Source: Magallana gigas
Taxonomy: Eukaryota
Reading direction: 5' to 3'
DNA: 64,000 nt
Assembly: GCF_963853765.1 (NCBI RefSeq)
Contig: NC_088856.1
Coordinates: forward strand, 35,712,001 to 35,776,000
The notes beneath the pieces were generated by a model that saw only the letters and a list, made by a program, of their open reading frames with translations, was not told where the DNA came from and ran no database searches. Below, piece after piece: positions 52,181 to 62,295 of this stretch; positions within the stretch are counted from its first letter, which is position 1, and the number at the start of each line of letters is the position of its first letter. Made by a program: the position numbers and the translations under genes.

Positions 52181-55100
52181 CTGCAAAAGAATCATACAGT
52201 GATAACTTCCTTGATAAAAATGAAGAATCTATTTGTAACTCATCTCCAATGGATAACACTCGACTTAATTATCAACTTCTGATTAGTTGATGTTTATTTT
52301 GATATCAACTCTGTACTGACAGGACAAACAATTCTATACAATGCCGTTGTATTTTCATTTTTTTTTTGCCTTTTAAAGTTATCAACAAAAAAAAAAAAAA
52401 AAAAATCAAAACATAAAATGGGTCTTCCATTGCTTTTGATGGGACAGGATTATCCTCCTGACAAATGGGAAGTATGCTCAGTTAAAAACCACAACTTGTT
52501 GGATGAAAAGTCATGTCCCACCAAAAATCATTAATGATCCTAAATCTAAATTGAACAGCACCATTTGTACAAACCTAGATACAACTTCGGGAGCCATCCA
52601 ATATGGAGTTCCCACCATGGTCTGTCGTTTGGAGTTATCCCCGCTCAACTGGGCACAGAACCCGAAATCGGTGAGCTTGACCGACCCGTTCATTCCTAAT
52701 AGTACATTGTCACTTTTAATATCCCTATGTATAATACCCTTGGAGTGCAAATAGTTCAGAGCCTGTAGGCACTCGCGGGTTACCGCGGCGATCTGTCCTT
52801 CGTTCATAATGGTTTCCGTGACAACGTCGGTCAGCGCACCTCCATCTAGGTACTCCATGACTACCCACAATTCATTTTTCTCCGACAGGAAGTAACAATC
52901 TAAGAAGTTGACGATGTTCTGATGTCGGTAGGTTTTCATGACTTCGATTTCTGTGATGAGAAGCTCTTTCTTGGGCTGGTTGGCTAAATCCATCGATTTA
53001 ATGGCCACCACTGTATCTCCTTCTTTGATTGGCTTTGCCATGTACACACAACCTGATGCTCTGCAATACCAATTTCAAAGCATGTTTACAAAAGTTTTTT
53101 TGTTAACATTTGAATTTAAATTTCCAAGGCGAATGTATCTTAAAACATTTAACGAATTATTCAAAATTCTACCAAATTTTTCAGAAATCAAATTAAAAAT
53201 ATAATACAGTTGAAGTTTGATATCTTGAACACTGATATCTCGAATACAATGGATATGTCGAAGTGATTCTAAGTCCCAACAACTTATTTTTTCAGTATTT
53301 TACCCTCGATATCTCGATTACTGGGATGTTTCAAAGTGTGTGAAAAAGATTAAGACATTTGCAATTACTATGGAATCATTTTTATTTGGGGTGGGGGGGG
53401 GGGGGGGGTTGTCAATGTTTGTTGGTAGCCATATTTTTTTTTTGGTACTTGAAATGTATATACGTTTGTGGGGATGTAAATTCATGAGCAAGGGTTACCC
53501 ACGAAAGCAACGAACATCGGTCCCCCAGAAACAATGATGATTCCACAGTACTCAAATAAATAATGTTATAAATACTTAAATATTAATATTAATGTTAGGT
53601 AAATCTCCTATGATCTTCAAAAATCATTTCACAAAATAATCAGAGTTATTTCCAGCTCTGCTGTAACTTATAACTCTTATATTATCCATCTGTTCTGTAG
53701 CTTGTTACAGATGTAAATAAAAACTTGTTCATGTATCAACCTATAGCTAGGTTTATAGTACATTTGTAAATGGACTTCTTACCCAGCTCCCAGTTTCTTT
53801 TGAGTGGTGTACTTAGAGGTGGGGTCCCCAGGTGATGCAAGTGCCCCTGATAAAAAAACAAACAAAAAATCAGTAATCAAATGAATTGGAAAACAAGTAT
53901 CTAAAGTTTTCAATTTCAAGAAGTATTTTATCCCTATGACTTGATACATGTATTATTGATAATTATACAAGTATGATGCGGAGTAAAATCTTATTGACAA
54001 TATAAAAGTTTATGTAAATGTGGGGCTGCTCAGGTATGTCTGTTCATTTCTAATTTTAAATATATATATATAGCCTCATTTACACAAGAGCTTCGATAAA
54101 GGGAAGCAATTTACAGAGAAATCAAAAACTTATCCTTGCATCCCCTATTTTCATAAAAATAAAACTTTGCTTTAATCAGAAAGGTGATTTTCCTTGTATT
54201 CATTTGAGTTTAATAAATTCTGAATGAAGCATATACAATACGGACAATTTGTACACTGGAAAACAAACCTTCAAAAAAAAAAGTTTTTAATTGAACCAAA
54301 CTGAAATAATATAATAAAGTTTCTTTAATTTCTTTTCTAAGAAGCAGTTGAACTCACGAAGGCCATTGTTGATTTCTTCGTCTGTCATGTTTTTCTTTTG
54401 AGATTTGGGTCGCCTCTGGATGGCTTCGGCTGGAGGTTCGTTGTCATTGTCGATCGTAATTTTGTTCACACCATCAACAATATCAGTCTTATGCTGCTAA
54501 AGGAAAAAGGGATATAATGGTAACTATGAAAATTAACACAAAATACAACTAAATGTCATAGTTAAATGTTATAGTTTCTAATACATCTCAAAACTTGAGA
54601 AATTGTGTTTATTATCATTCTTTTACCCTCTCATAAATGACTAAACACCATTCTTTGACCCTCTCATAATTGATTCAAAACATTATGTAACATTCATTTT
54701 TTTACTGAAATTTACATCTGCACTTAATTCACAGAAAAACTCATCAAAAATCATCTAACATGTAAAACTTAATTAATCATTTACAGCACAAGAAGTTTAA
54801 TTCAACTTATAAGCAACATTTTTATAACTCAATTGAAGATAAAGTACCAATAGTAATACTGAATGGTTTCCTCTTTTATTTACACACTTACCTCAGCGTC
54901 TGATGGTGTCCTCTCAAAAACGGGGGGGTCCACATTGTGTGGGGCGGGAAGCTTTTCTTCATTTGACTTTTTGCTGTTGCGTTTTTCCTCATCGCTGTAA
55001 TCGAGTTCATCATCGGACTCGGCGATTGACTGTTGAACGTTGATAAACTTGCCCTCCCCAGGTTTTTTCTTGACGGACTTGGTGAAGGTTCGCAGTGAAT

Positions 55101-57694
55101 TAATAACAGCCTCTGGATTGGCTGCCTGGTCAGCTTTCCTTTAAATCGTCCAATCAAAAAGCAAGTTAGAATCTCTCAAGATCAGATTCACTTAAACTCT
55201 ACTTTCAATGTAATTTCTTGAATGCATTGTCAAAATTTATAAATAATTGATGTCTAGGTGATAACTGATTTATTCGGAGAACACAGTTACCGGTACTGTG
55301 AAATCATTAGAATTTGTGGAGGCACAATTTTCATAAATTTCATTGGAAACAAAAAATGTACATCCTAAAAATAAATTATACAACCATTCATCATTTATAC
55401 TAGCAAATCCAGGAAATAATATCAGAATTCATGTAACTGAAAAATTATCAATTCATGAAAAAATGACCTTCACAAATGAAAACGACTTCATGCAGAGTAA
55501 CCCACCATCATGAAAAGTCTTTTCAGCTGACATCACAAGTTGATCATTAAGTTTATATCAATCATTAAACTTTTATTTATCTTTAATTCATCAATAGGAA
55601 AAATAAGCAGATCTATATATTTTGTATATGCGATAAAAATAAAACAGTTTATGACTCAATAAAAACAATGGTATGAAGGAAATGAATTGCATAATAAATT
55701 GCATCCAGTGAGCTTAGATGTCTTCCTCCTCTAAACCCCCCCCCCCAAATTTTTGGTTCGAGTACTAGGGTAAGGGTGGGGTGTTATTCCAAAATAGGAG
55801 AACTTGATTTCATCAATTATAAATAAAGCATTTTGTTGGGCTAGGTAGGTTAATTATATTATTATTAACAACAATATTTAAATTTTGTGATAAACAAAAT
55901 TATAGGTAAATATGCATATATCTAAATAGAATGATATTGTCTGCATGTCTCATGTGAAGTAATTCTTACAGTTGATTCGTACAGATACAATGGAATATGG
56001 TGCTTAGTAATAATACGGTTTATAAGATTATTTTACATGTTTTGATGTCAATAAACAGGGTATGGAGAGGACGTTTTAACGTACTAGCTCTGATTTACCA
56101 GGACTACGAATGGGAAGATTAATTATAATACTTAAATAGAATAAAACTCGCAAGGTATAACAGGTGTCTATATCCTTATCTAATTAATAATTTCATACCG
56201 ACAGCCTATGAAAGAATATGTGTCGGATAATATACCAGTTGTCAGAACAACTTGTCAAAGGATATCCAAGATTACTCAATATATATCAAAGGCTCTCTTG
56301 TCAGAAAAGGAAGATTAAATTGACAATACAAAAGGAAATCTTTTAATTAGATATATACAGGAAGGCTTGCAATATAATGCAAGACTTGCAACATAAAAGT
56401 CGACTAAAGAAAAACCTCCAATATAAACAATGGGTTTTGCTATAAAGGAAGACTTTATAGGAATAGGCATTACGATACTAGAATACTCTTCAAGGAAAAC
56501 TTCCCATACTAATTAAATGTATTAATTAATATAAAGACCAAGACTCATAATATAAAAGGATTAATATGCATGATATGATGGAAGATTTGATATAATGGAA
56601 GACTTGTGATACAAAGGAAGACACTTACGATATAAAAGGAAGACTTACGATATATTGGAGGACTGAAGTAAAGCAGTCCATGCTGGAGGGAGCCCCTCAA
56701 AATCCCCAGTCTCCTGATTAAAACCTACGTGAAAGTTGTGTTTGACGGCTGTGGGGGGACCAATGTTCATGGCCGGGGCGTTATCGGAGGAAGACGACCC
56801 CGAGGGCCGCTTCTTACCACCAATCTTGAAAGGCATGCTTAACTGAAGCAGAAAAAGAAAATAGGCAACGATAATATATACGATTACAAAGCCAGAACTG
56901 TGTGTGTAATAATATAAATACAGTATAAATATCACATAGGAATACATAATCCTCAGTCTCAACCAAATTTTTTTTTCATTGTCAACATGCACCTTTTTTT
57001 TTTTTTTTTTTTTAAATAAGCAGAATAATACTCCTGAATCAATGCTTCTGAATTTGATTTGTCCTCATGGAATTTATTGCAGGATTGACCTTAACAGTTA
57101 ACTTTACAAAGGTGTATGTATTGACAGAAAAAAACAATCATGGTTTTGAGGCTCGGGTACATCTCCATGCTGTACAGTAACAACAATAAGGTTACCGAGC
57201 AATATCTTGTTACGTCTCGCTACAAAATACAGTACATAGTAGAGGTGTATACAATACAAAATGAGTATACATGTACGACATAACACACAGCATGGTTAAT
57301 CATCCATAGGTTCATCACACTTCCAAATACGAAGCATAAAACGCAGCGTAACTCTTGGAGGATTAATAAATTAATGTGGAGGAGGTGATCACAGTCTCAT
57401 TCATAGCTAGAGGAGTAACTTGAGGGCAGATCCAACACAGCAGAGAGGAAGAGGCGGATCCAAGATTCCATGGGTGGGAGTGTGGCGATGATCTACTTAC
57501 GAAATGTCTGCCGATTTCAGCAGTTTTTTCCATGTCTCTGAGAGTATCAGATCTCCCGTGACCATGTCAATATTTATATGCAGGTTGTGTTTGACTCCTG
57601 TTGGCGAGCTAATCTCGTGAATCCCGGAAGCCGAGGGGTCTTTCTCGCTGCTCGCTCCCATGCGGCTTTTGCGGAACTTTTTTATGAAACTCAT
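51862..57694 (-). CDS. PAK3: Span of p21-activated Ser/Thr kinase gene (group I, invertebrate Pak3-like), ~480 aa, with two alternative CRIB exons
   Basis: Exons (57694-57501 or 56836-56649), 55138-54892, 54496-54358, 53846-53783, 53060-52575 and 52180-51862 join in frame (1449 or 1443 nt). Motifs [36 protein letters not shown] are intact. YGKKVD resembles Drosophila Pak3 as recalled. Confidence 0.9.
52575..53060 (-). CDS. PAK3: PAK kinase-domain exon (GASGCVYMA...APEVVS)
   Basis: Acceptor GGTATTGCAG, donor AG|GTTTGT, subdomains I-VIII. Confidence 0.95.
53205..53337 (+). mobile_element. Truncated Tc1/mariner (pogo/Tigger-like) MITE fragment in PAK intron
   Basis: TA-CAGT start followed by repeated GATATCTCGA motifs typical of this class; no right TIR found. 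Confidence 0.45.
53366..53550. mobile_element. Short MITE with TIRs TACTATGGAATCAT / ATGATTCCACAGTA
   Basis: 14-bp imperfect inverted termini including terminal TA; related end TACTGTGAAATCAT at ~55293. Confidence 0.6.
53783..53846 (-). CDS. PAK3: PAK exon ([22 protein letters not shown])
   Basis: Acceptor TTTTTTATCAG, donor GG|GTAAGA, start of kinase domain, phase 1/2. Confidence 0.92.
54358..54496 (-). CDS. PAK3: PAK exon ([10 protein letters not shown]...[14 protein letters not shown])
   Basis: NAGNAG acceptor TTTAG-CAG, donor C|GTGAGT; MTDEEI is the conserved pre-kinase motif. Confidence 0.88.
54892..55138 (-). CDS. PAK3: PAK exon: autoinhibitory segment and acidic linker ([18 protein letters not shown]...PSDAE)
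   Basis: Acceptor TTTAAAG, donor GAG|GTAAGT, phase 2/0. NPEAVINSL corresponds to NPQAVLDVL of PAK1. Confidence 0.85.
56649..56836 (-). CDS. PAK3: PAK alternative first coding exon B with canonical CRIB/PBD
   Basis: [10 protein letters not shown]...[39 protein letters not shown]; acceptor CTTCAG at 56843, donor TC|GTAAGT (phase 2). Confidence 0.9.
57501..57694 (-). CDS. PAK3: PAK alternative first coding exon A with diverged CRIB/PBD
   Basis: [11 protein letters not shown]...[39 protein letters not shown]; donor TC|GTAAGT (phase 2) at the same codon position as exon B. Confidence 0.78.
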
Positions 57695-60600
57695 GATCAA
57701 CGCTCTCTACTGTCTAAAGTTGCTGTATCAAAAAAAACGAGTCAAAGTCAACACTGACAATGGATTATATAGCAAAGGAACCATGAAATCTTATTATATA
57801 TCATTAGGTTCTTAAAATATCTAAGATCACCTCCTGCTTTTTAAAGACAAACACAATACGCCACATTCTGAAATATCTAACAAAGTAGCCAGTAGCCTTA
57901 ATCTTGAACTTACATGTTGTACAGCGAAGAGATTAAATGAATGCTATAAGCTAGTTCATGACTTCCTTATGAAGTCTAGCTTTTAAACCTTCCGAATCAG
58001 CCGGTACCTATACACAAATACAAGGTTCAAAGCAGTAACTGAAGGCATGTTTCCTCAAAATACACCCTAGCTACAATGTAGCTAATATTAGAAGTTTAGA
58101 ACATGTCGACATGTTCAAGTTAACAATAAAAAAATCCCAAAACTTTCATATTTCATATGTTCCATAACAAAAAAATGTCAAGATTAAGAACAAGCATTTA
58201 GCACTAAGATGATTTTCGATGAAGGCAATATTTCTTCATAAAGTCCAGCTGCAAACAATGAAGACCTAAATGAAAAAATATATATAAATCAATGTTTGGG
58301 TCATGCAGAGATATCTTCTAATTAAAAACCTTTGACTTCCTTAATGAACTTTAATAACTACAGGAAGGGGTTTTAATTGCTTTAAAACTTAAAAATTCAC
58401 AGGCAATCGTCGTGACACTGCACGCGAAACACAATCCACAATTAGGTTATTAAAAATTACTGGAACTTCATACAACTCTTAATTTTTCTTGGGTCATCTT
58501 TAAAAGAATTGTTTATTTGCTCTCCCAAGAATGACTGAAGAAAAAGGAACCAAATCGAGATTTTTTTTTTTTTAACACGAACAGAAATTATAATTTATTC
58601 AATAAAAAGCATTTTTCCAACTTCAAAAGCTTGTATATGCTTGTACATTGAACACAAATGTATAAATGTGTTAAATTAATGTGGATTGGAATCCTGTGAT
58701 TTATGTTCAGATAGATTTCAGGACAAGTTTGCGCAACTGAAAAGATTTGGAATCCAGTTTTTGAAATAATTATGCAAGCTCACTCCAATTAAATCTTCCT
58801 ATCTTAAAATCTATCAAACTCTGGCCTACAAAATCAACTATAGAAACTACAGCTAAACTATTAAAAATAGATTATTAACTTTAAGAAAATCATCGTGGAT
58901 AAAAAAACTTACTACCTTGCACTTGATAAGCATTTGACAAGAGAGAACTTATTCACTCATTCTTCACTCATTCACTCAATTACCCATTGCCTTAAAATGG
59001 AGCATTCTAAAAAAACAGCATTATATAAACTACATGCTTAGTAACATCCTTGTCATAATAAAATCATAAAATTTAAGTCTGATAGCGATAGACCTTTTCG
59101 TGCAATTACCATTCGTGACCATAAGCTGATCATGAAATACTGTCATACTTAACTATGTACATGTATTGATTAATCATATCAATTTAAAGTACATGTACGT
59201 GTGCTGTATTTGATTTTATGACTTAATATATAAACACGTACCACTCAACACATGAATGAAATAACATTGTTAAGAAAATCACAACACACGACATGCGAAA
59301 TATCAAATATTATAGATCTTAGATGATCTCCTCCTCCCACTATTTCAATAACAGTCGATCACCAGGACGTAAAGTTACCAGGCGTAAAGTGATTATAATG
59401 CCTTATTTGTACATACATTACCTTGACTATATATCTGATATGAGATTAATCTGAAAAAGCGGTATGCTATATAATTTCTACCCATTGTTCATGGAATTGG
59501 GAATAATTTTTTCAAAGTTAAGAATATACTGGTATTATTTATATATATATGATTTTTCATATTTGGCTCTCATCACTAATTCACTTGCAGTTCATTCAGT
59601 TTGTTTTTAATTGAGTTCATCCTCAAAATTAAAAGTTAAGCAAAGTCAGAAACTTTTAGTATTACATGTATTTCATATTTTCATGATCATAGACCAAGAA
59701 TTTCCTTACAAACCTCAAAACTGAATTTTTAATAAAAATCCATGTACTGTAAAATTGATGCTCATGTGAAGATTGATTATTTATAAAACCAAAGAAGATA
59801 AACTGAGCTAGAGTTCAGATTTCAATATAGTTAAAAAATAGGTACAGTACCAAAATCATGTAATTCACAGTCTCTTTGGACGGGGATATTAGAATTGTGG
59901 TAACAATTAAATAAGTAAGAAATCCATTTTAATGGACTGAACATTTTTGTTTTTGGATCAGTATATAATATGGTGGCTTTAACAATTCATTTTGTCATTT
60001 TCTTTTTTTTTTTTTTTTTTAGGAAAAACAAAATCAAATCCTAGCTGAGATTCATCAAAATACAAATTCAAATGTGGTTAAAACATTTCTTAGGTTGATC
60101 TACTTTTATGTCTCATAAACCTTTGATATGGGAGGACAAAAAACAAACTGCTTCTTCCTGAATAAAAAAAATTGTGTGTATGTAAAACAAACCTACATGT
60201 AAATACAGGTACAGTATTCAGAGCTTCGCGGACAAATTCTCGTAAAGGATTTAAATTCCTTCCTGATGTAGTTATGTCACACAAGATTGAAAAAAAACTT
60301 GAAAATGTTTTAAATATCACATTCCTCGAGAAGAATCACGGTGTAAGAGTTTTGTCACACAATAAGGGGCCACATTCTGTGTGTAAACTGTAATTTGTCA
60401 GCTAGTTCCTTTCCAACACTATATAACTTCCTCAACCCATTCGACAAAGTACTTCACAAACTGTTTTAAAAAAAATAAAAATCCCTATACATTGTACTTA
60501 TCCTATCGTCATACAGTAACTTAGGCCCACTGCATGCACAGTTGTAATGAATATCCATGTAGTTGACAATGATCTAATTAAACGCGCGTATCAAAAAGCG

Positions 60601-62295
60601 GCTCATTATATTTGCAACAGAATAACAGTGCATTAAATACCGCACTCTAGCTGTCTTGTATGAAATTTTGCGTTCCTTCCTTGTACTCGAGGGGAGATTT
60701 TTGCCCAAGTTCTGTTAAACGTCCTGTAATTTGTATGTGTACTATGTTTATATATAAATATATCAGTCAGATTCTTCCTGCATAAAAACAGTGCCTTTGT
60801 TTCCCTGTCTAAAATATGAACAGTCACTTCTCATATCTTCTCAAGCCTGGCAGCCAAACACAAAAAATACCCTGATGCATCCCCCAAATAACTCAACTCC
60901 TCAACAAAAACAAAGATCTACTTCAGCTTCATTGTAACATATCCCATGACTAACAAACACACAATGGCTATCATTTAATCGCGATGATGCATTACTGTAC
61001 AGCGAGTTCGAGTGTCACGTGTCAAGCCTCCTAGGTGAGTGGTAATGTTTAGATGAGTTCAAAGATGTGGCAATCAGGCTCAGTGTAGCAATTAGTCAGT
61101 TGGCAAAACTTCACTGTCTTTGTCCCGGCGTAGCACGTACCTGTAAGCCCCTATATATATATGTCTGTATAAATAGCGTTTGTTGTTGCTTGTTTTTAAT
61201 AGTGTGTTCCCGTTTTTGCACACATTTGATAATTGTATGAGTTCAAAACAATAGGTGTGAATTGTAAGTGTTTTGATAACAATTATAGTCTGCTTTTTAC
61301 CCGAGTTTCAATGGCATTTCAAAGAAGAGTTTAGTGTATAATGTACATATAACCTGGTGCGATTCCTGTGGCTTATATGTACACAATAAGGGGTGGGGGT
61401 GGGTGGTGGTTGAACAATAAACAAAATATTAAAAATTAACCATCCAAAATTGTGCAATATAAATTTACATATAACATATATGACAAAAAATGGGTACATC
61501 ATATAAAATATTGATATATCAATTTTTCCTTGCGTTTTGTAGCTTTGGAACTAGGTATTGAACTATAATTGAAGCATTAAATGTGATACGGAATATAGCA
61601 ATTAGGTAATTAACTTACCTGGACAAATTCCCGTTCTGCACACATTTTTTCTATACTAGATTTTCAAATGTGTGCAAAACGAGAACAAACCGCTTTTATA
61701 TACATTAAAAAAAACCTGGATGGTCATGTCTATTTTTAGACTGTATTGATCTCCTGCAACTTGGAGACATCAGAAGTGAATACCTGTCCCATATAATGCA
61801 TGTACAAATAGAAAGCTTGATTGCTATTCAGTGTCAAAAATTTTTGGAATGCATGTTCTTAATAAATAGAAAATGCATATCTTAATCGACATCATTTTGT
61901 GAGATGTGCACCACCATTAAGTTAAGGTGGTATATTTACCAAAAAATATTCTTTAAAGTTAAGCCACAATTACAATTATTATGAGCCTTGGACCCCTTGG
62001 TTCCAAACAAAAAGTGACTTTGTCTAGAGCACCCCTGCATCCATATCAGGAACTAAGACAATTAATTAAATGATTCTTAAGCTTTTTAAATATATGAATA
62101 TGCATCCTTCCTTTTCCGAGGCTAACTATCCTAGATCATCAAGCTTTTCCAAGGTTCTACAAGTTATATATAAATTAACTGCAAACTATATCAAGTTTAA
62201 GTCCTTAGTATAAAAAATGATTTCCATCAATGTCAATCGATATAAAAAACGTACTAAGTACATGAAGTATTTATTTTGTGTCCAAATTTTGTATC

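What the first reader, a model, noticed from the sequence alone, without database searches (positions are those of the whole stretch)
56649..57694. PAK gene with two tandem, mutually exclusive CRIB-encoding first exons
Two separate exons each carry a basic N-terminus plus a CRIB/PBD with their own ATG. Both end at the identical codon position (...S-N-I-S / ...A-D-I-S, TC|GTAAGT, phase 2), so either can splice to the shared autoinhibitory exon at 55138. Splicing A onto B's acceptor gives TC+TTAAGC = TCT TAA, an immediate stop, so tandem inclusion is unproductive. This looks like exon duplication producing two kinases with swappable GTPase-sensing modules. I am not aware of this arrangement in described PAKs, but cannot check the literature.
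Basis: partly seen in the sequence, partly recalled or inferred. Interest (0 to 1): 0.78.

Follow-up and report, generated by a model that had tools for sequence, protein, structure and literature searches.

The report
Oyster PAK kinase with two swappable CRIB exons
An oyster signalling kinase (a group I PAK) has two duplicated first coding exons, each encoding its own GTPase-docking (CRIB) segment; RNA reads show both are used one at a time, and both are conserved between oyster species, so one gene makes two kinases with different sensor ends.

Summary
On the minus strand, exon A (57694-57501) and exon B (56836-56649) each carry an ATG, a basic N-terminus and a CRIB/PBD half. Both pass Pfam's PBD cut-off. 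Both end in phase 2 at TC|GTAAGT.

RNA reads join each exon to the shared exon at 55138. B->shared appears in 4 runs from 3 studies. A->shared rests on 6 reads in 2 runs of one study. No A->B joint was seen. That joint would give TCT TAA, and this stop is conserved in three species.

Two related oyster contigs (L003, L007) carry the same A-B tandem. Only the exons align. The exon A core has 17 nucleotide differences, 15 at third codon positions, and one amino-acid change (pN/pS 0.03-0.12). A is therefore a constrained coding exon, not a pseudo-exon.

One correction: B is not a first exon. Non-coding 5' exons (donor at 60197; another about 2.4 kb beyond the window) splice into its acceptor and skip A. 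A seems to have its own start site just upstream.

Usage differs by sample. A more distant bivalve-like genome has one CRIB exon.

I found no paper describing this. I could not check whether genome annotations list it. The different-GTPase idea is untested. It is a new variant of known kinds.

The parts
57501..57694 (-). Exon A, coding part: ATG, a basic N-terminus ([11 protein letters not shown]...), a non-canonical CRIB ([16 protein letters not shown]) and the first half of the PBD. The donor is TC|GTAAGT, phase 2.
   Evidence: Translation. Pfam PBD 33.7 bits. Joint 55137|57500 in X20 (2 reads) and X21 (4 reads, 4 starts). Orthologues in L003, L007 and L008 with core pN/pS 0.03-0.12.
57695..57830 (-). 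Probable 5' UTR and start-site zone of exon A transcripts. It includes a conserved acceptor-like TTTTTTGATACAG| motif with its AG at 57724-57723.
   Evidence: X21 depth is 23 at 57730, 16 reads reach 57764, and depth is about 7 by 57824 (tables 3, 4, 7). There is an in-frame TAG four codons before the ATG. The acceptor-like motif is conserved in three species. The start-site position is inferred, not mapped.
56649..56842 (-). Exon B: acceptor ...CTGCTTCAG|TTAAGC, ATG at 56836, a basic N-terminus ([11 protein letters not shown]...), a canonical-type CRIB ([16 protein letters not shown]...GLPPAW), and donor TC|GTAAGT in phase 2.
   Evidence: Translation. Pfam PBD 55.9 bits. Joint 55137|56648 in all 4 runs. 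The acceptor and TTAAGC are invariant in three species. pN/pS 0.08-0.16.
56843..57500 (-). A-B intron (658 nt). It is not alignable between species except for about 45-90 nt before B's acceptor. It holds AATAAA (about 57078-57073) and an A20 tract (56985-57023), where unspliced coverage ends in the polyA runs.
   Evidence: Depth table.
54892..55138 (-). Shared exon (third in the B transcript). It completes the Ser codon and continues [15 protein letters not shown]..., the rest of the PBD/autoinhibitory region.
   Evidence: It receives both joints. Conserved in L007 and L014.
60197..60700 (-). Proximal non-coding 5' exon (its 5' end is not defined and runs beyond 60700). Donor CAT|GTAGGT at 60197 splices to B's acceptor and skips A.
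   Evidence: Joint 56842|60197 in X1 (2 contigs) and X5 (1 contig). Contig depth is 120 over 60242-60700 in X5. There is an in-frame TGA before B's ATG.
51862..54493 (-). Remaining shared exons: 54493-54358, 53846-53783, 53060-52575 and 52180-51862 (stop TAA). They encode the linker and the kinase domain.
   Evidence: Gene model with canonical splice sites and an open frame. The loose end at 54892 matches exon 54493. Pkinase 156 bits. Best PDB matches are PAK3/PAK1 at 228 bits against PAK4 at 183.
58278..58360 (-). Short conserved non-coding block about 600 nt upstream of A's ATG. It contains an ETS-like AGGAAGT. It is a possible regulatory element for the A transcript.
   Evidence: It is the only upstream piece that aligns to L007 and L008. 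Any function is inferred only.

Best explanation
This is a compact group I PAK gene of an oyster, on the minus strand from about 66.4 kb (outside the window) to 51.86 kb. Its first coding exon exists in two tandemly duplicated versions.

What each version encodes. Each encodes the start codon, a basic N-terminal patch, the CRIB motif and the first two thirds of the p21-binding domain, up to the equivalent of human PAK1 residue ~113. Each ends in the same phase. The rest of the autoinhibitory region and the kinase domain are shared.

How each is transcribed. B-type mRNAs start at upstream non-coding exons, splice into B's acceptor and skip A. A-type mRNAs most likely start at an internal promoter in that intron, within about 150 nt of A's ATG. 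Their donor skips B and joins the shared exon. Including both exons would put a stop (TCT TAA) four bases before B's ATG, so such RNAs are unproductive and probably cleared by nonsense-mediated decay.

What results. The gene gives two kinases, 481 and 479 aa, that differ only in the GTPase-docking, membrane-patch and dimerisation segment. B is canonical (HVGFN...GLPPAW). A is divergent but constrained (HINID, one residue shorter, no GLP). The two are used in different proportions in different samples.

Shown: exon anatomy, both splice joints, skipping of A by the upstream exons, conservation and purifying selection in three oyster lineages.
Inferred: A's own promoter, the role of decay, and any difference in GTPase preference or autoinhibition.
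For: - Sequence and frames.
- PBD in both exons.
- Group I PAK kinase domain.
- RNA: joint A->shared in X20 and X21. Joint B->shared in X20, X21, X1 and X5. Joint upstream exon (60197)->B in X1 and X5. A second upstream exon appears as a loose end at 56844 and was located in the genome about 2.4 kb beyond the window. No A->B joint was seen.
- Sample-dependent use: depth over exon A is 5.7 (X20) and 24 (X21), against under 1 for B. B contigs have depth 118 (X1) and 715 (X5), with no A joint in those two runs.
- A as a first exon: depth 23 at 57730, upstream of the acceptor-like AG, falling to about 7 by 57824.
- Conservation: the same A-B tandem occurs in L003 and L007/L008, where only exons align at about 79-83%.
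- Selection: the A core has 17 nucleotide differences, 15 at third codon positions, and 1 amino-acid change. None of 100,000 random-substitution simulations gave so few amino-acid changes. pN/pS is 0.03-0.12 for the A core and 0.11-0.17 for the B core. Both exon A polymorphisms in X21 (57503, 57557) are synonymous (my codon count).
- The TTAAGC after B's acceptor is invariant, so the stop on double inclusion is conserved.
Against: - The A->shared joint rests on 6 reads (5 distinct starts) from two runs of one study.
- The contig runs X1 and X5 show exon A sequence but no A joint.
- In X20, coverage over exon A is hardly above a flat unspliced RNA that runs from at least 60.7 kb to about 57.02 kb. 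Part of the exon A signal is therefore not mRNA for the kinase.
- No 5' ends were mapped, so A's promoter is inferred from depth alone.
- A conserved acceptor-like motif upstream of A hints that it can also be an internal exon.
- With B barely covered in X20/X21 and A barely covered in X1/X5, the absence of A->B joints is weak evidence.
- Junction reads into the shared exon (5 in X21) are far fewer than its depth (32) predicts. Other 5' forms therefore exist.
- No biochemical evidence exists that A binds any GTPase.
Confidence: 0.8

Rival explanations
1. Strict mutually exclusive cassette exons. A and B would both be internal exons fed by the same upstream non-coding exons, and the choice would be made by the splicing machinery rather than by promoters.
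For: An acceptor-like polypyrimidine tract plus AG (TTTTTTGAT(AC)AG|C), 28 nt before A's ATG, is conserved in three species while the sequence further upstream is not. B is certainly an internal exon. The two exons have nearly equal length (194 and 188 nt of coding sequence) and equal phase, as in classical mutually exclusive pairs.
Against: No joint from any upstream exon to 57722 was reported in four runs. In X21 the depth just upstream of that AG (23 at 57730; 16 reads reaching 57764) equals the exon depth, so most A RNAs there are not spliced at it.
Confidence: 0.12
2. Exon A mainly serves a short unspliced, intronically polyadenylated RNA. Its reading frame stops right after the donor (…ADIS-TAA), giving a 65-aa CRIB-only peptide that could buffer Cdc42/Rac. 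The spliced A kinase would be a minor by-product.
For: In the polyA runs, coverage continues past A's donor at about half the exon depth (X21) or at full depth (X20). It stops near an AATAAA and A20 tract at 57.08-56.99 kb. The unspliced frame ends at TCG TAA. Short open reading frames of exactly this form are what the databases hold.
Against: The stop is an automatic by-product of a consensus GTAAGT donor after TC, and B has the same one. The AATAAA and the A tract are not conserved: L003 has neither and L007 has no A tract. An A20 tract is a classic site of oligo-dT mispriming. Conservation reaches to the exact donor, and spliced joints exist. The database reading frames come from genomic or unspliced contigs and say nothing about translation.
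Confidence: 0.05
3. Exon A is a decaying duplicate (pseudo-exon), and its few joints are splicing noise.
For: A scores lower on the PBD model (33.7 bits against 55.9) and lacks the canonical HVGF and GLP. Junction support is thin. One foreign contig (L004) carries an A fragment with neutral-looking changes and a rearrangement.
Against: A has an intact frame, ATG and donor in three lineages whose introns no longer align. Fifteen of 17 core differences are at third codon positions, with 1 amino-acid change; no simulation gave so few, and 42% of simulated sequences would carry a stop. pN/pS is 0.03-0.12. Exon A dominates over B in two runs. L004 is a single rearranged or chimeric contig from another sample.
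Confidence: 0.03

Closest known systems
Mammalian PAK3 splice variants (cassette exons b and c inserted between residues 92 and 93 of the PBD/autoinhibitory domain)
   Same: Alternative exon use changes the GTPase-binding and autoinhibitory module of a group I PAK and leaves the kinase domain untouched. According to PMC10017488 (citing Rousseau 2003 and Kreis 2008), PAK3b, c and cb have high constitutive kinase activity and do not require GTPase activation, and the PAK3b autoinhibitory domain cannot inhibit PAK3a.
   Different: The PAK3 exons are small inserts of 15 and 21 aa added to a constant CRIB. They can be combined, and they are not duplicates of a neighbouring exon. Here the whole N-terminus plus CRIB is replaced by a homologous duplicate with its own start codon, and the two cannot be combined productively.
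Tandemly duplicated mutually exclusive exons (for example FGFR2 IIIb/IIIc, PKM exons 9/10, insect Dscam clusters); from general knowledge
   Same: The exons are homologous neighbours of nearly equal length and identical phase. Only one is found per mRNA, and joint inclusion destroys the reading frame or creates a stop.
   Different: The pair sits at the 5' end and each exon has its own ATG. The choice appears to be coupled to different transcription starts. A shared upstream exon was shown only for B.
Variable first coding exons joined to constant exons (UGT1A, clustered protocadherins); from general knowledge
   Same: Alternative 5' coding exons encode the recognition part of the protein, and each is spliced to a common set of exons that encode the catalytic or constant part.
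   Different: In those loci every variable exon is a true first exon without an acceptor. Here B has a strong, conserved acceptor fed by non-coding first exons, and there are only two variants.
Short invertebrate group I PAKs with the CRIB in the first coding exon (named 'PAK3-like' or 'PAK 3' in mollusc and annelid records)
   Same: Many unnamed database reading frames have the same exon design: ATG, a basic stretch, I[GS]xPTxVKHN[FW]HVGFN...GLPPAW...SNI[SRT], then a donor. Kinase-exon relatives are named PAK3-like [Mya arenaria] and PAK 3 [Lamellibrachia satsuma].
   Different: Where flanks could be read (L014/L015), those genes have a single CRIB exon. The second, HINID-type exon next to it was seen only in the three oyster lineages.

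Membership tests
Group I p21-activated kinase (PAK1-3 type) | C-terminal STE20-type kinase domain closer to PAK1/2/3 than to PAK4-6 | tested here: met
   The kinase exon scores 228 bits against PAK3/PAK1 structures and 183 bits against PAK4. Pkinase scores 156 bits.
Group I p21-activated kinase (PAK1-3 type) | N-terminal CRIB/p21-binding domain | tested here: met
   PF00786 scores above the cut-off in both alternative exons: 33.7 and 55.9 bits against 21.3. The I, P and two His residues of the CRIB are invariant in all aligned copies.
Group I p21-activated kinase (PAK1-3 type) | Autoinhibitory switch region overlapping and following the PBD | tested here: inconclusive
   The shared exon begins [18 protein letters not shown], which resembles PAK1 KSEQKKNPQAVLDVLEFY by eye (from memory). 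The exon alone gave no Pfam hit. The spliced protein could not be submitted by reference.
Group I p21-activated kinase (PAK1-3 type) | Binding of GTP-bound Cdc42/Rac and relief of autoinhibition | not testable with these tools
   This needs pull-down and kinase assays with each isoform.
Mutually exclusive tandem exon pair | Homologous adjacent exons of the same phase and similar length | tested here: met
   The coding parts are 194 and 188 nt, both phase 2. Exon A's only other hit in the genome is exon B (43% identity).
Mutually exclusive tandem exon pair | Never joined to each other in mature mRNA | tested here: inconclusive
   No 57501|56842 joint was seen in 4 runs. However, each run covers one of the two exons poorly, and decay would hide such RNAs.
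Mutually exclusive tandem exon pair | Both exons spliced from the same upstream exon | tested here: not met
   Upstream-exon joints were found only for B (56842|60197 and the distal exon). Reads run through A's acceptor-like site at full depth.
Alternative-promoter first coding exons | Each variant exon is the first exon of its transcript | tested here: not met
   A probably is, from its depth profile. B is not, because it is exon 2 behind non-coding first exons.

The most novel reading that the evidence does not exclude
The two exons would give one PAK catalytic unit two different upstream inputs. The canonical B module would respond to Cdc42/Rac. The strongly constrained but non-canonical A module (HINID, no GLP, a different basic patch) would bind another Rho-family GTPase, or set a different autoinhibition and dimerisation threshold. 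The choice would be made by promoter use in particular tissues or stages. That would be a natural domain-swap experiment kept in oysters for tens of millions of years.
Probability: 0.35. Interest if true: 0.65.

Novelty: new variant of a known kind. Interest (0 to 1): 0.5.

Why it matters
PAK kinases translate Rho-GTPase activity into changes in the cytoskeleton and in transcription. The CRIB/PBD segment decides which GTPase switches the kinase on and how tightly it is held off.

This gene replaces that whole segment by a duplicated exon and keeps everything else identical. It therefore offers a clean natural pair for asking what the CRIB-flanking residues contribute to GTPase choice, membrane targeting and autoinhibition.

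It also documents a lineage-specific route (exon duplication plus a new internal promoter) by which signalling kinases can gain regulatory diversity without gene duplication.

For genome annotation, both N-termini should be kept as real isoforms.

The practical impact is modest until binding differences are shown.

Tried and rejected
- Full-length annotated isoforms could not be retrieved. The spliced proteins have no reference form, and the search for homologous proteins only sees 0.55-1.75 times the query length. Whether public annotations already list both N-termini is therefore unknown.
- Dating the duplication beyond oysters:
  - P0029 (Mya arenaria) is not on record.
  - Three look-ups returned gene tables without DNA. 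No second PBD reading frame was called within 10 kb, which is weak negative evidence.
  - L013 held no CRIB exon within 10 kb of the kinase exon.
  - L014/L015 gave the one usable negative.
- A tree of 30 CRIB-exon peptides (43 columns) is unresolved. Oyster A groups weakly (64/80) with non-canonical reading frames P0009, P0010 and P0157, and the tool flagged possible long-branch attraction. I draw no conclusion on an older origin.
- P0002 looked like an 80%-identical orthologue, but every change is C->T. It is a bisulfite-read artefact.
- L004 looked like a third orthologue, but it is a rearranged or chimeric contig.
- The CRIB-only mini-protein idea was considered and given low weight.
- Literature searches for PAK + CRIB + alternative first exon or alternative promoter returned 0 papers. 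PAK + mutually exclusive exon returned only unrelated papers. Oyster + PAK papers do not treat isoforms.
- Complex prediction was not used. No oyster Cdc42/Rac sequence was available as an unaltered session sequence.
Full report
**The observation.**
On the minus strand there are two exons about 860 nt apart. Exon A runs from an ATG at 57694 to 57501. Exon B has an acceptor AG at 56844-56843, an ATG at 56836, and ends at 56649.

Each exon encodes a short basic N-terminus followed by a CRIB motif and the first part of a p21-binding domain:
- A: [11 protein letters not shown]...[38 protein letters not shown].
- B: [11 protein letters not shown]...[39 protein letters not shown].

Both end with TC|GTAAGT in phase 2. 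The next exon starts at 55138 with G, which completes a Ser codon, and continues [15 protein letters not shown]....

Pfam's PBD model matches both exons above its gathering score (A 33.7 bits, B 55.9 bits, cut-off 21.3). In both cases the match covers profile positions 1-39 of 59, so the domain is completed by the shared exon.

Joining A to B's acceptor gives ...ADIS-stop (TCT TAA).

This is not chance. The whole 564-Mb assembly has 9 PBD matches. Exon A's only match other than itself is exon B (43% identity).

**The gene.**
With canonical splice sites the remaining exons are 55138-54892, 54493-54358, 53846-53783, 53060-52575 and 52180-51862. They give open frames of 481 aa (A form) and 479 aa (B form).

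The kinase exon is closest to solved PAK3/PAK1 structures (228 bits) and further from PAK4 (183 bits). This is a short group I PAK. The runs that hold the stretch are labelled as an oyster or as oyster metagenome.

**RNA evidence (two raw polyA runs, X20 and X21, of one study; two contig runs, X1 and X5, of two other studies).**
- The joint 55137|56648 (B to shared exon) is present in all four runs. In X1 it lies on a 2483-nt contig of depth 118, and in X5 on a contig of depth 715.
- The joint 55137|57500 (A to shared exon) is present in X20 (2 reads, one start) and X21 (4 reads, 4 starts). It is absent from X1 and X5.
- No A-to-B joint was reported.
- A third joint, 56842|60197, shows that an upstream exon with donor CAT|GTAGGT splices into B's acceptor and skips A.
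- A loose end at B's acceptor identifies a second upstream exon. I located it in the same chromosome about 2.4 kb beyond the window's end, at window-equivalent ~66.40 kb.
- Both upstream exons have an in-frame stop before B's ATG, so they are non-coding leaders.

B is therefore the first coding exon but not a first exon.

A behaves differently. In X21 the depth is 23 at 57730, upstream of an acceptor-like AG at 57724-57723. Sixteen reads reach 57764, and the depth falls to about 7 by 57824. Most A RNAs therefore begin within about 150 nt upstream of the ATG rather than being spliced there. This start is inferred from depth and was not mapped.

Use differs strongly between samples. Depth over exon A is 5.7 and 24 in X20 and X21, against under 1 for exon B. 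B dominates in X1 and X5.

**Conservation.**
A search of 1.84 billion protein representatives, and then of the 90% clusters, with exon A found short reading frames that are exon A orthologues. Their contigs could be read.
- L003 (JGI metagenome, 1451 nt) holds intact A and B in the same order, about 600 nt apart.
- L007 (ENA, 5367 nt) holds intact A, B, the shared exon and the next two exons. L008 holds A and B.
- In blastn only the exons align (about 79-83%). The introns do not. Exon A aligns as well as the constitutive exons.
- In the 31-codon core of exon A, the window and L003 differ at 17 nucleotides, 15 of them at third codon positions, with a single amino-acid change. None of 100,000 random-substitution simulations gave so few amino-acid changes, and 42% of them introduced a stop.
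- Across the three pairs, pN/pS is 0.03-0.12 for the A core and 0.11-0.17 for the B core. A's N-terminal 24 codons evolve much faster (pN 0.35), while B's are invariant.
- The two exon A polymorphisms seen in X21 (57503, 57557) are synonymous by my codon count.
- A's donor, B's acceptor and the TTAAGC that creates the stop on A-to-B joining are invariant in the three species.

Both fail to refute.

**Age of the duplication.**
In a more distant bivalve-like genome (L014/L015; kinase exon 85% identical, introns about four times longer) there is a single B-like CRIB exon. There is no second CRIB exon in the 10 kb upstream or in the 6 kb down to the shared exon. Three other look-ups returned only gene tables. 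In these, no second PBD reading frame was called within 10 kb.

Many organisms have B-type first coding exons. A few unidentified ones have non-canonical exons (HVKVD, HVTVD, HVVIN) that group weakly with oyster A in a tree flagged for possible long-branch attraction.

I conclude that the pair is shared by at least three oyster lineages whose synonymous sites are near saturation. An older origin is neither shown nor excluded.

**How it most likely works.**
From established knowledge of group I PAKs, GTP-bound Cdc42/Rac binds the CRIB/PBD and releases the overlapping autoinhibitory segment. A basic patch before the CRIB helps membrane and GTPase engagement. The strand after the CRIB takes part in the inhibitory dimer.

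Here exactly this stretch, up to the equivalent of PAK1 residue ~113, is exchanged. The rest of the inhibitory region and the kinase stay the same. B keeps the canonical HVGFN...GLPPAW. A keeps the I, S, P and both His residues of the CRIB and the Trp. It has HINID instead of HVGFN, is one residue shorter, and lacks GLP. This odd version is itself frozen by selection.

The two isoforms are therefore expected to differ in GTPase preference or affinity, membrane patch, or strength of autoinhibition. This is inference; nothing here tests binding.

Exon choice appears to be coupled to transcription start. Upstream promoters give exon 1 -> B. An internal start gives A -> shared exon. Double inclusion gives a premature stop more than 50 nt before later junctions, which should trigger nonsense-mediated decay (also inferred).

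A strict cassette model is kept as a rival because an acceptor-like motif upstream of A is conserved.

**Open points.**
In the polyA runs an unspliced RNA covers from at least 60.7 kb down to about 57.02 kb. It ends at an AATAAA and A20 tract inside the A-B intron, so part of the exon A coverage is not kinase mRNA, especially in X20. The signal and tract are not conserved, so mispriming or a species-specific end is more likely than a conserved CRIB-only peptide.

Junction reads into the shared exon are fewer than its depth predicts. Coverage also ramps up from about 56.3 kb to 55.15 kb in X20 and X21, so a further 5' form may exist.

**Comparison with what is known.**
The nearest described case is mammalian PAK3. 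Its cassette exons b and c insert 15 or 21 residues into the PBD/autoinhibitory domain and make the kinase constitutively active (PMC10017488).

The architecture also recalls tandem mutually exclusive exons and variable first coding exons of the UGT1A or protocadherin type, but it fits neither definition fully (see Membership tests).

Full-text searches found no paper describing alternative CRIB-encoding exons in a PAK. I could not check whether public annotations already list both isoforms.

**Verdict.**
This is a real, conserved, alternatively used pair of CRIB exons. It is a new variant of known kinds and of moderate interest. The interest would rise if the two modules prove to read different GTPases.

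Noticed in passing
window 56985-57078 (minus strand), with depth bins 56939-60700: In the two polyA runs an unspliced RNA covers from at least 60.7 kb down to an AATAAA and A20 tract inside the A-B intron, then drops below depth 1. This is either intronic polyadenylation or oligo-dT mispriming. The signal is not conserved in L003 or L007.
   Followed up: partly
window 57764-57766: X21 reads run into foreign sequence from both sides (16 and 9 reads). The two ends are inverted repeats of each other (CAGTAAAACACG...). This looks like a MITE-like insertion polymorphism in the 5' leader of exon A in that animal.
   Followed up: no
window 55148-56341: In X20 and X21, sense coverage rises stepwise towards the shared exon (0.15 -> 1.6 -> 3.3 -> 6 -> 7 -> 14 -> 32), while the intron just after exon B is empty. 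This may be a further start site giving CRIB-less transcripts. An in-frame stop lies directly before the exon.
   Followed up: no
window 55293-55332: A ~40-nt segment has many loose ends on both sides and antisense reads. It is probably a short repeat shared with abundant transcripts from elsewhere.
   Followed up: no
window 58278-58360: This is the only non-coding block upstream of exon A that aligns to L007 and L008 (~71-80%). It contains an ETS-like AGGAAGT and may be a promoter or enhancer element for the A transcript.
   Followed up: partly
window 54493-54498: The acceptor of the next exon is a tandem TAG|CAG, and the reads use the second AG. The X20 loose-end consensus there reads HHTAVV instead of HKTDIV (agreement 0.74). 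This is an allelic or alternative form.
   Followed up: no
L004 (Logan SRR4419960 contig, 920 nt): The contig joins window-like pieces 57990-57551, 56059-56332 (inverted) and 54682-54469 at 91-96% identity. Its exon A fragment has 5 amino-acid changes against 2 silent ones. It is either a rearranged pseudogene copy in a relative or an assembly chimera.
   Followed up: partly
P0002 (65 aa, Logan): This database 'protein' is 80% identical to exon A, and every difference is a C-to-T change (P>F/L, H>Y, T>I, A>V, S>F). It is an open reading frame called on bisulfite-converted reads, not a homologue.
   Followed up: yes
L006:727-1188 (ENA metagenome scaffold; P0008): One open reading frame of an unidentified eukaryote carries two CRIB motifs a few residues apart: a non-canonical HVEYD type followed by an HVEFN type. 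This suggests CRIB duplication happened more than once in this PAK subfamily.
   Followed up: no
window 20450-24650: Another first-stage note on this window reports two miR-29 hairpins in an intron (s1-356101). I did not examine it.
   Followed up: no
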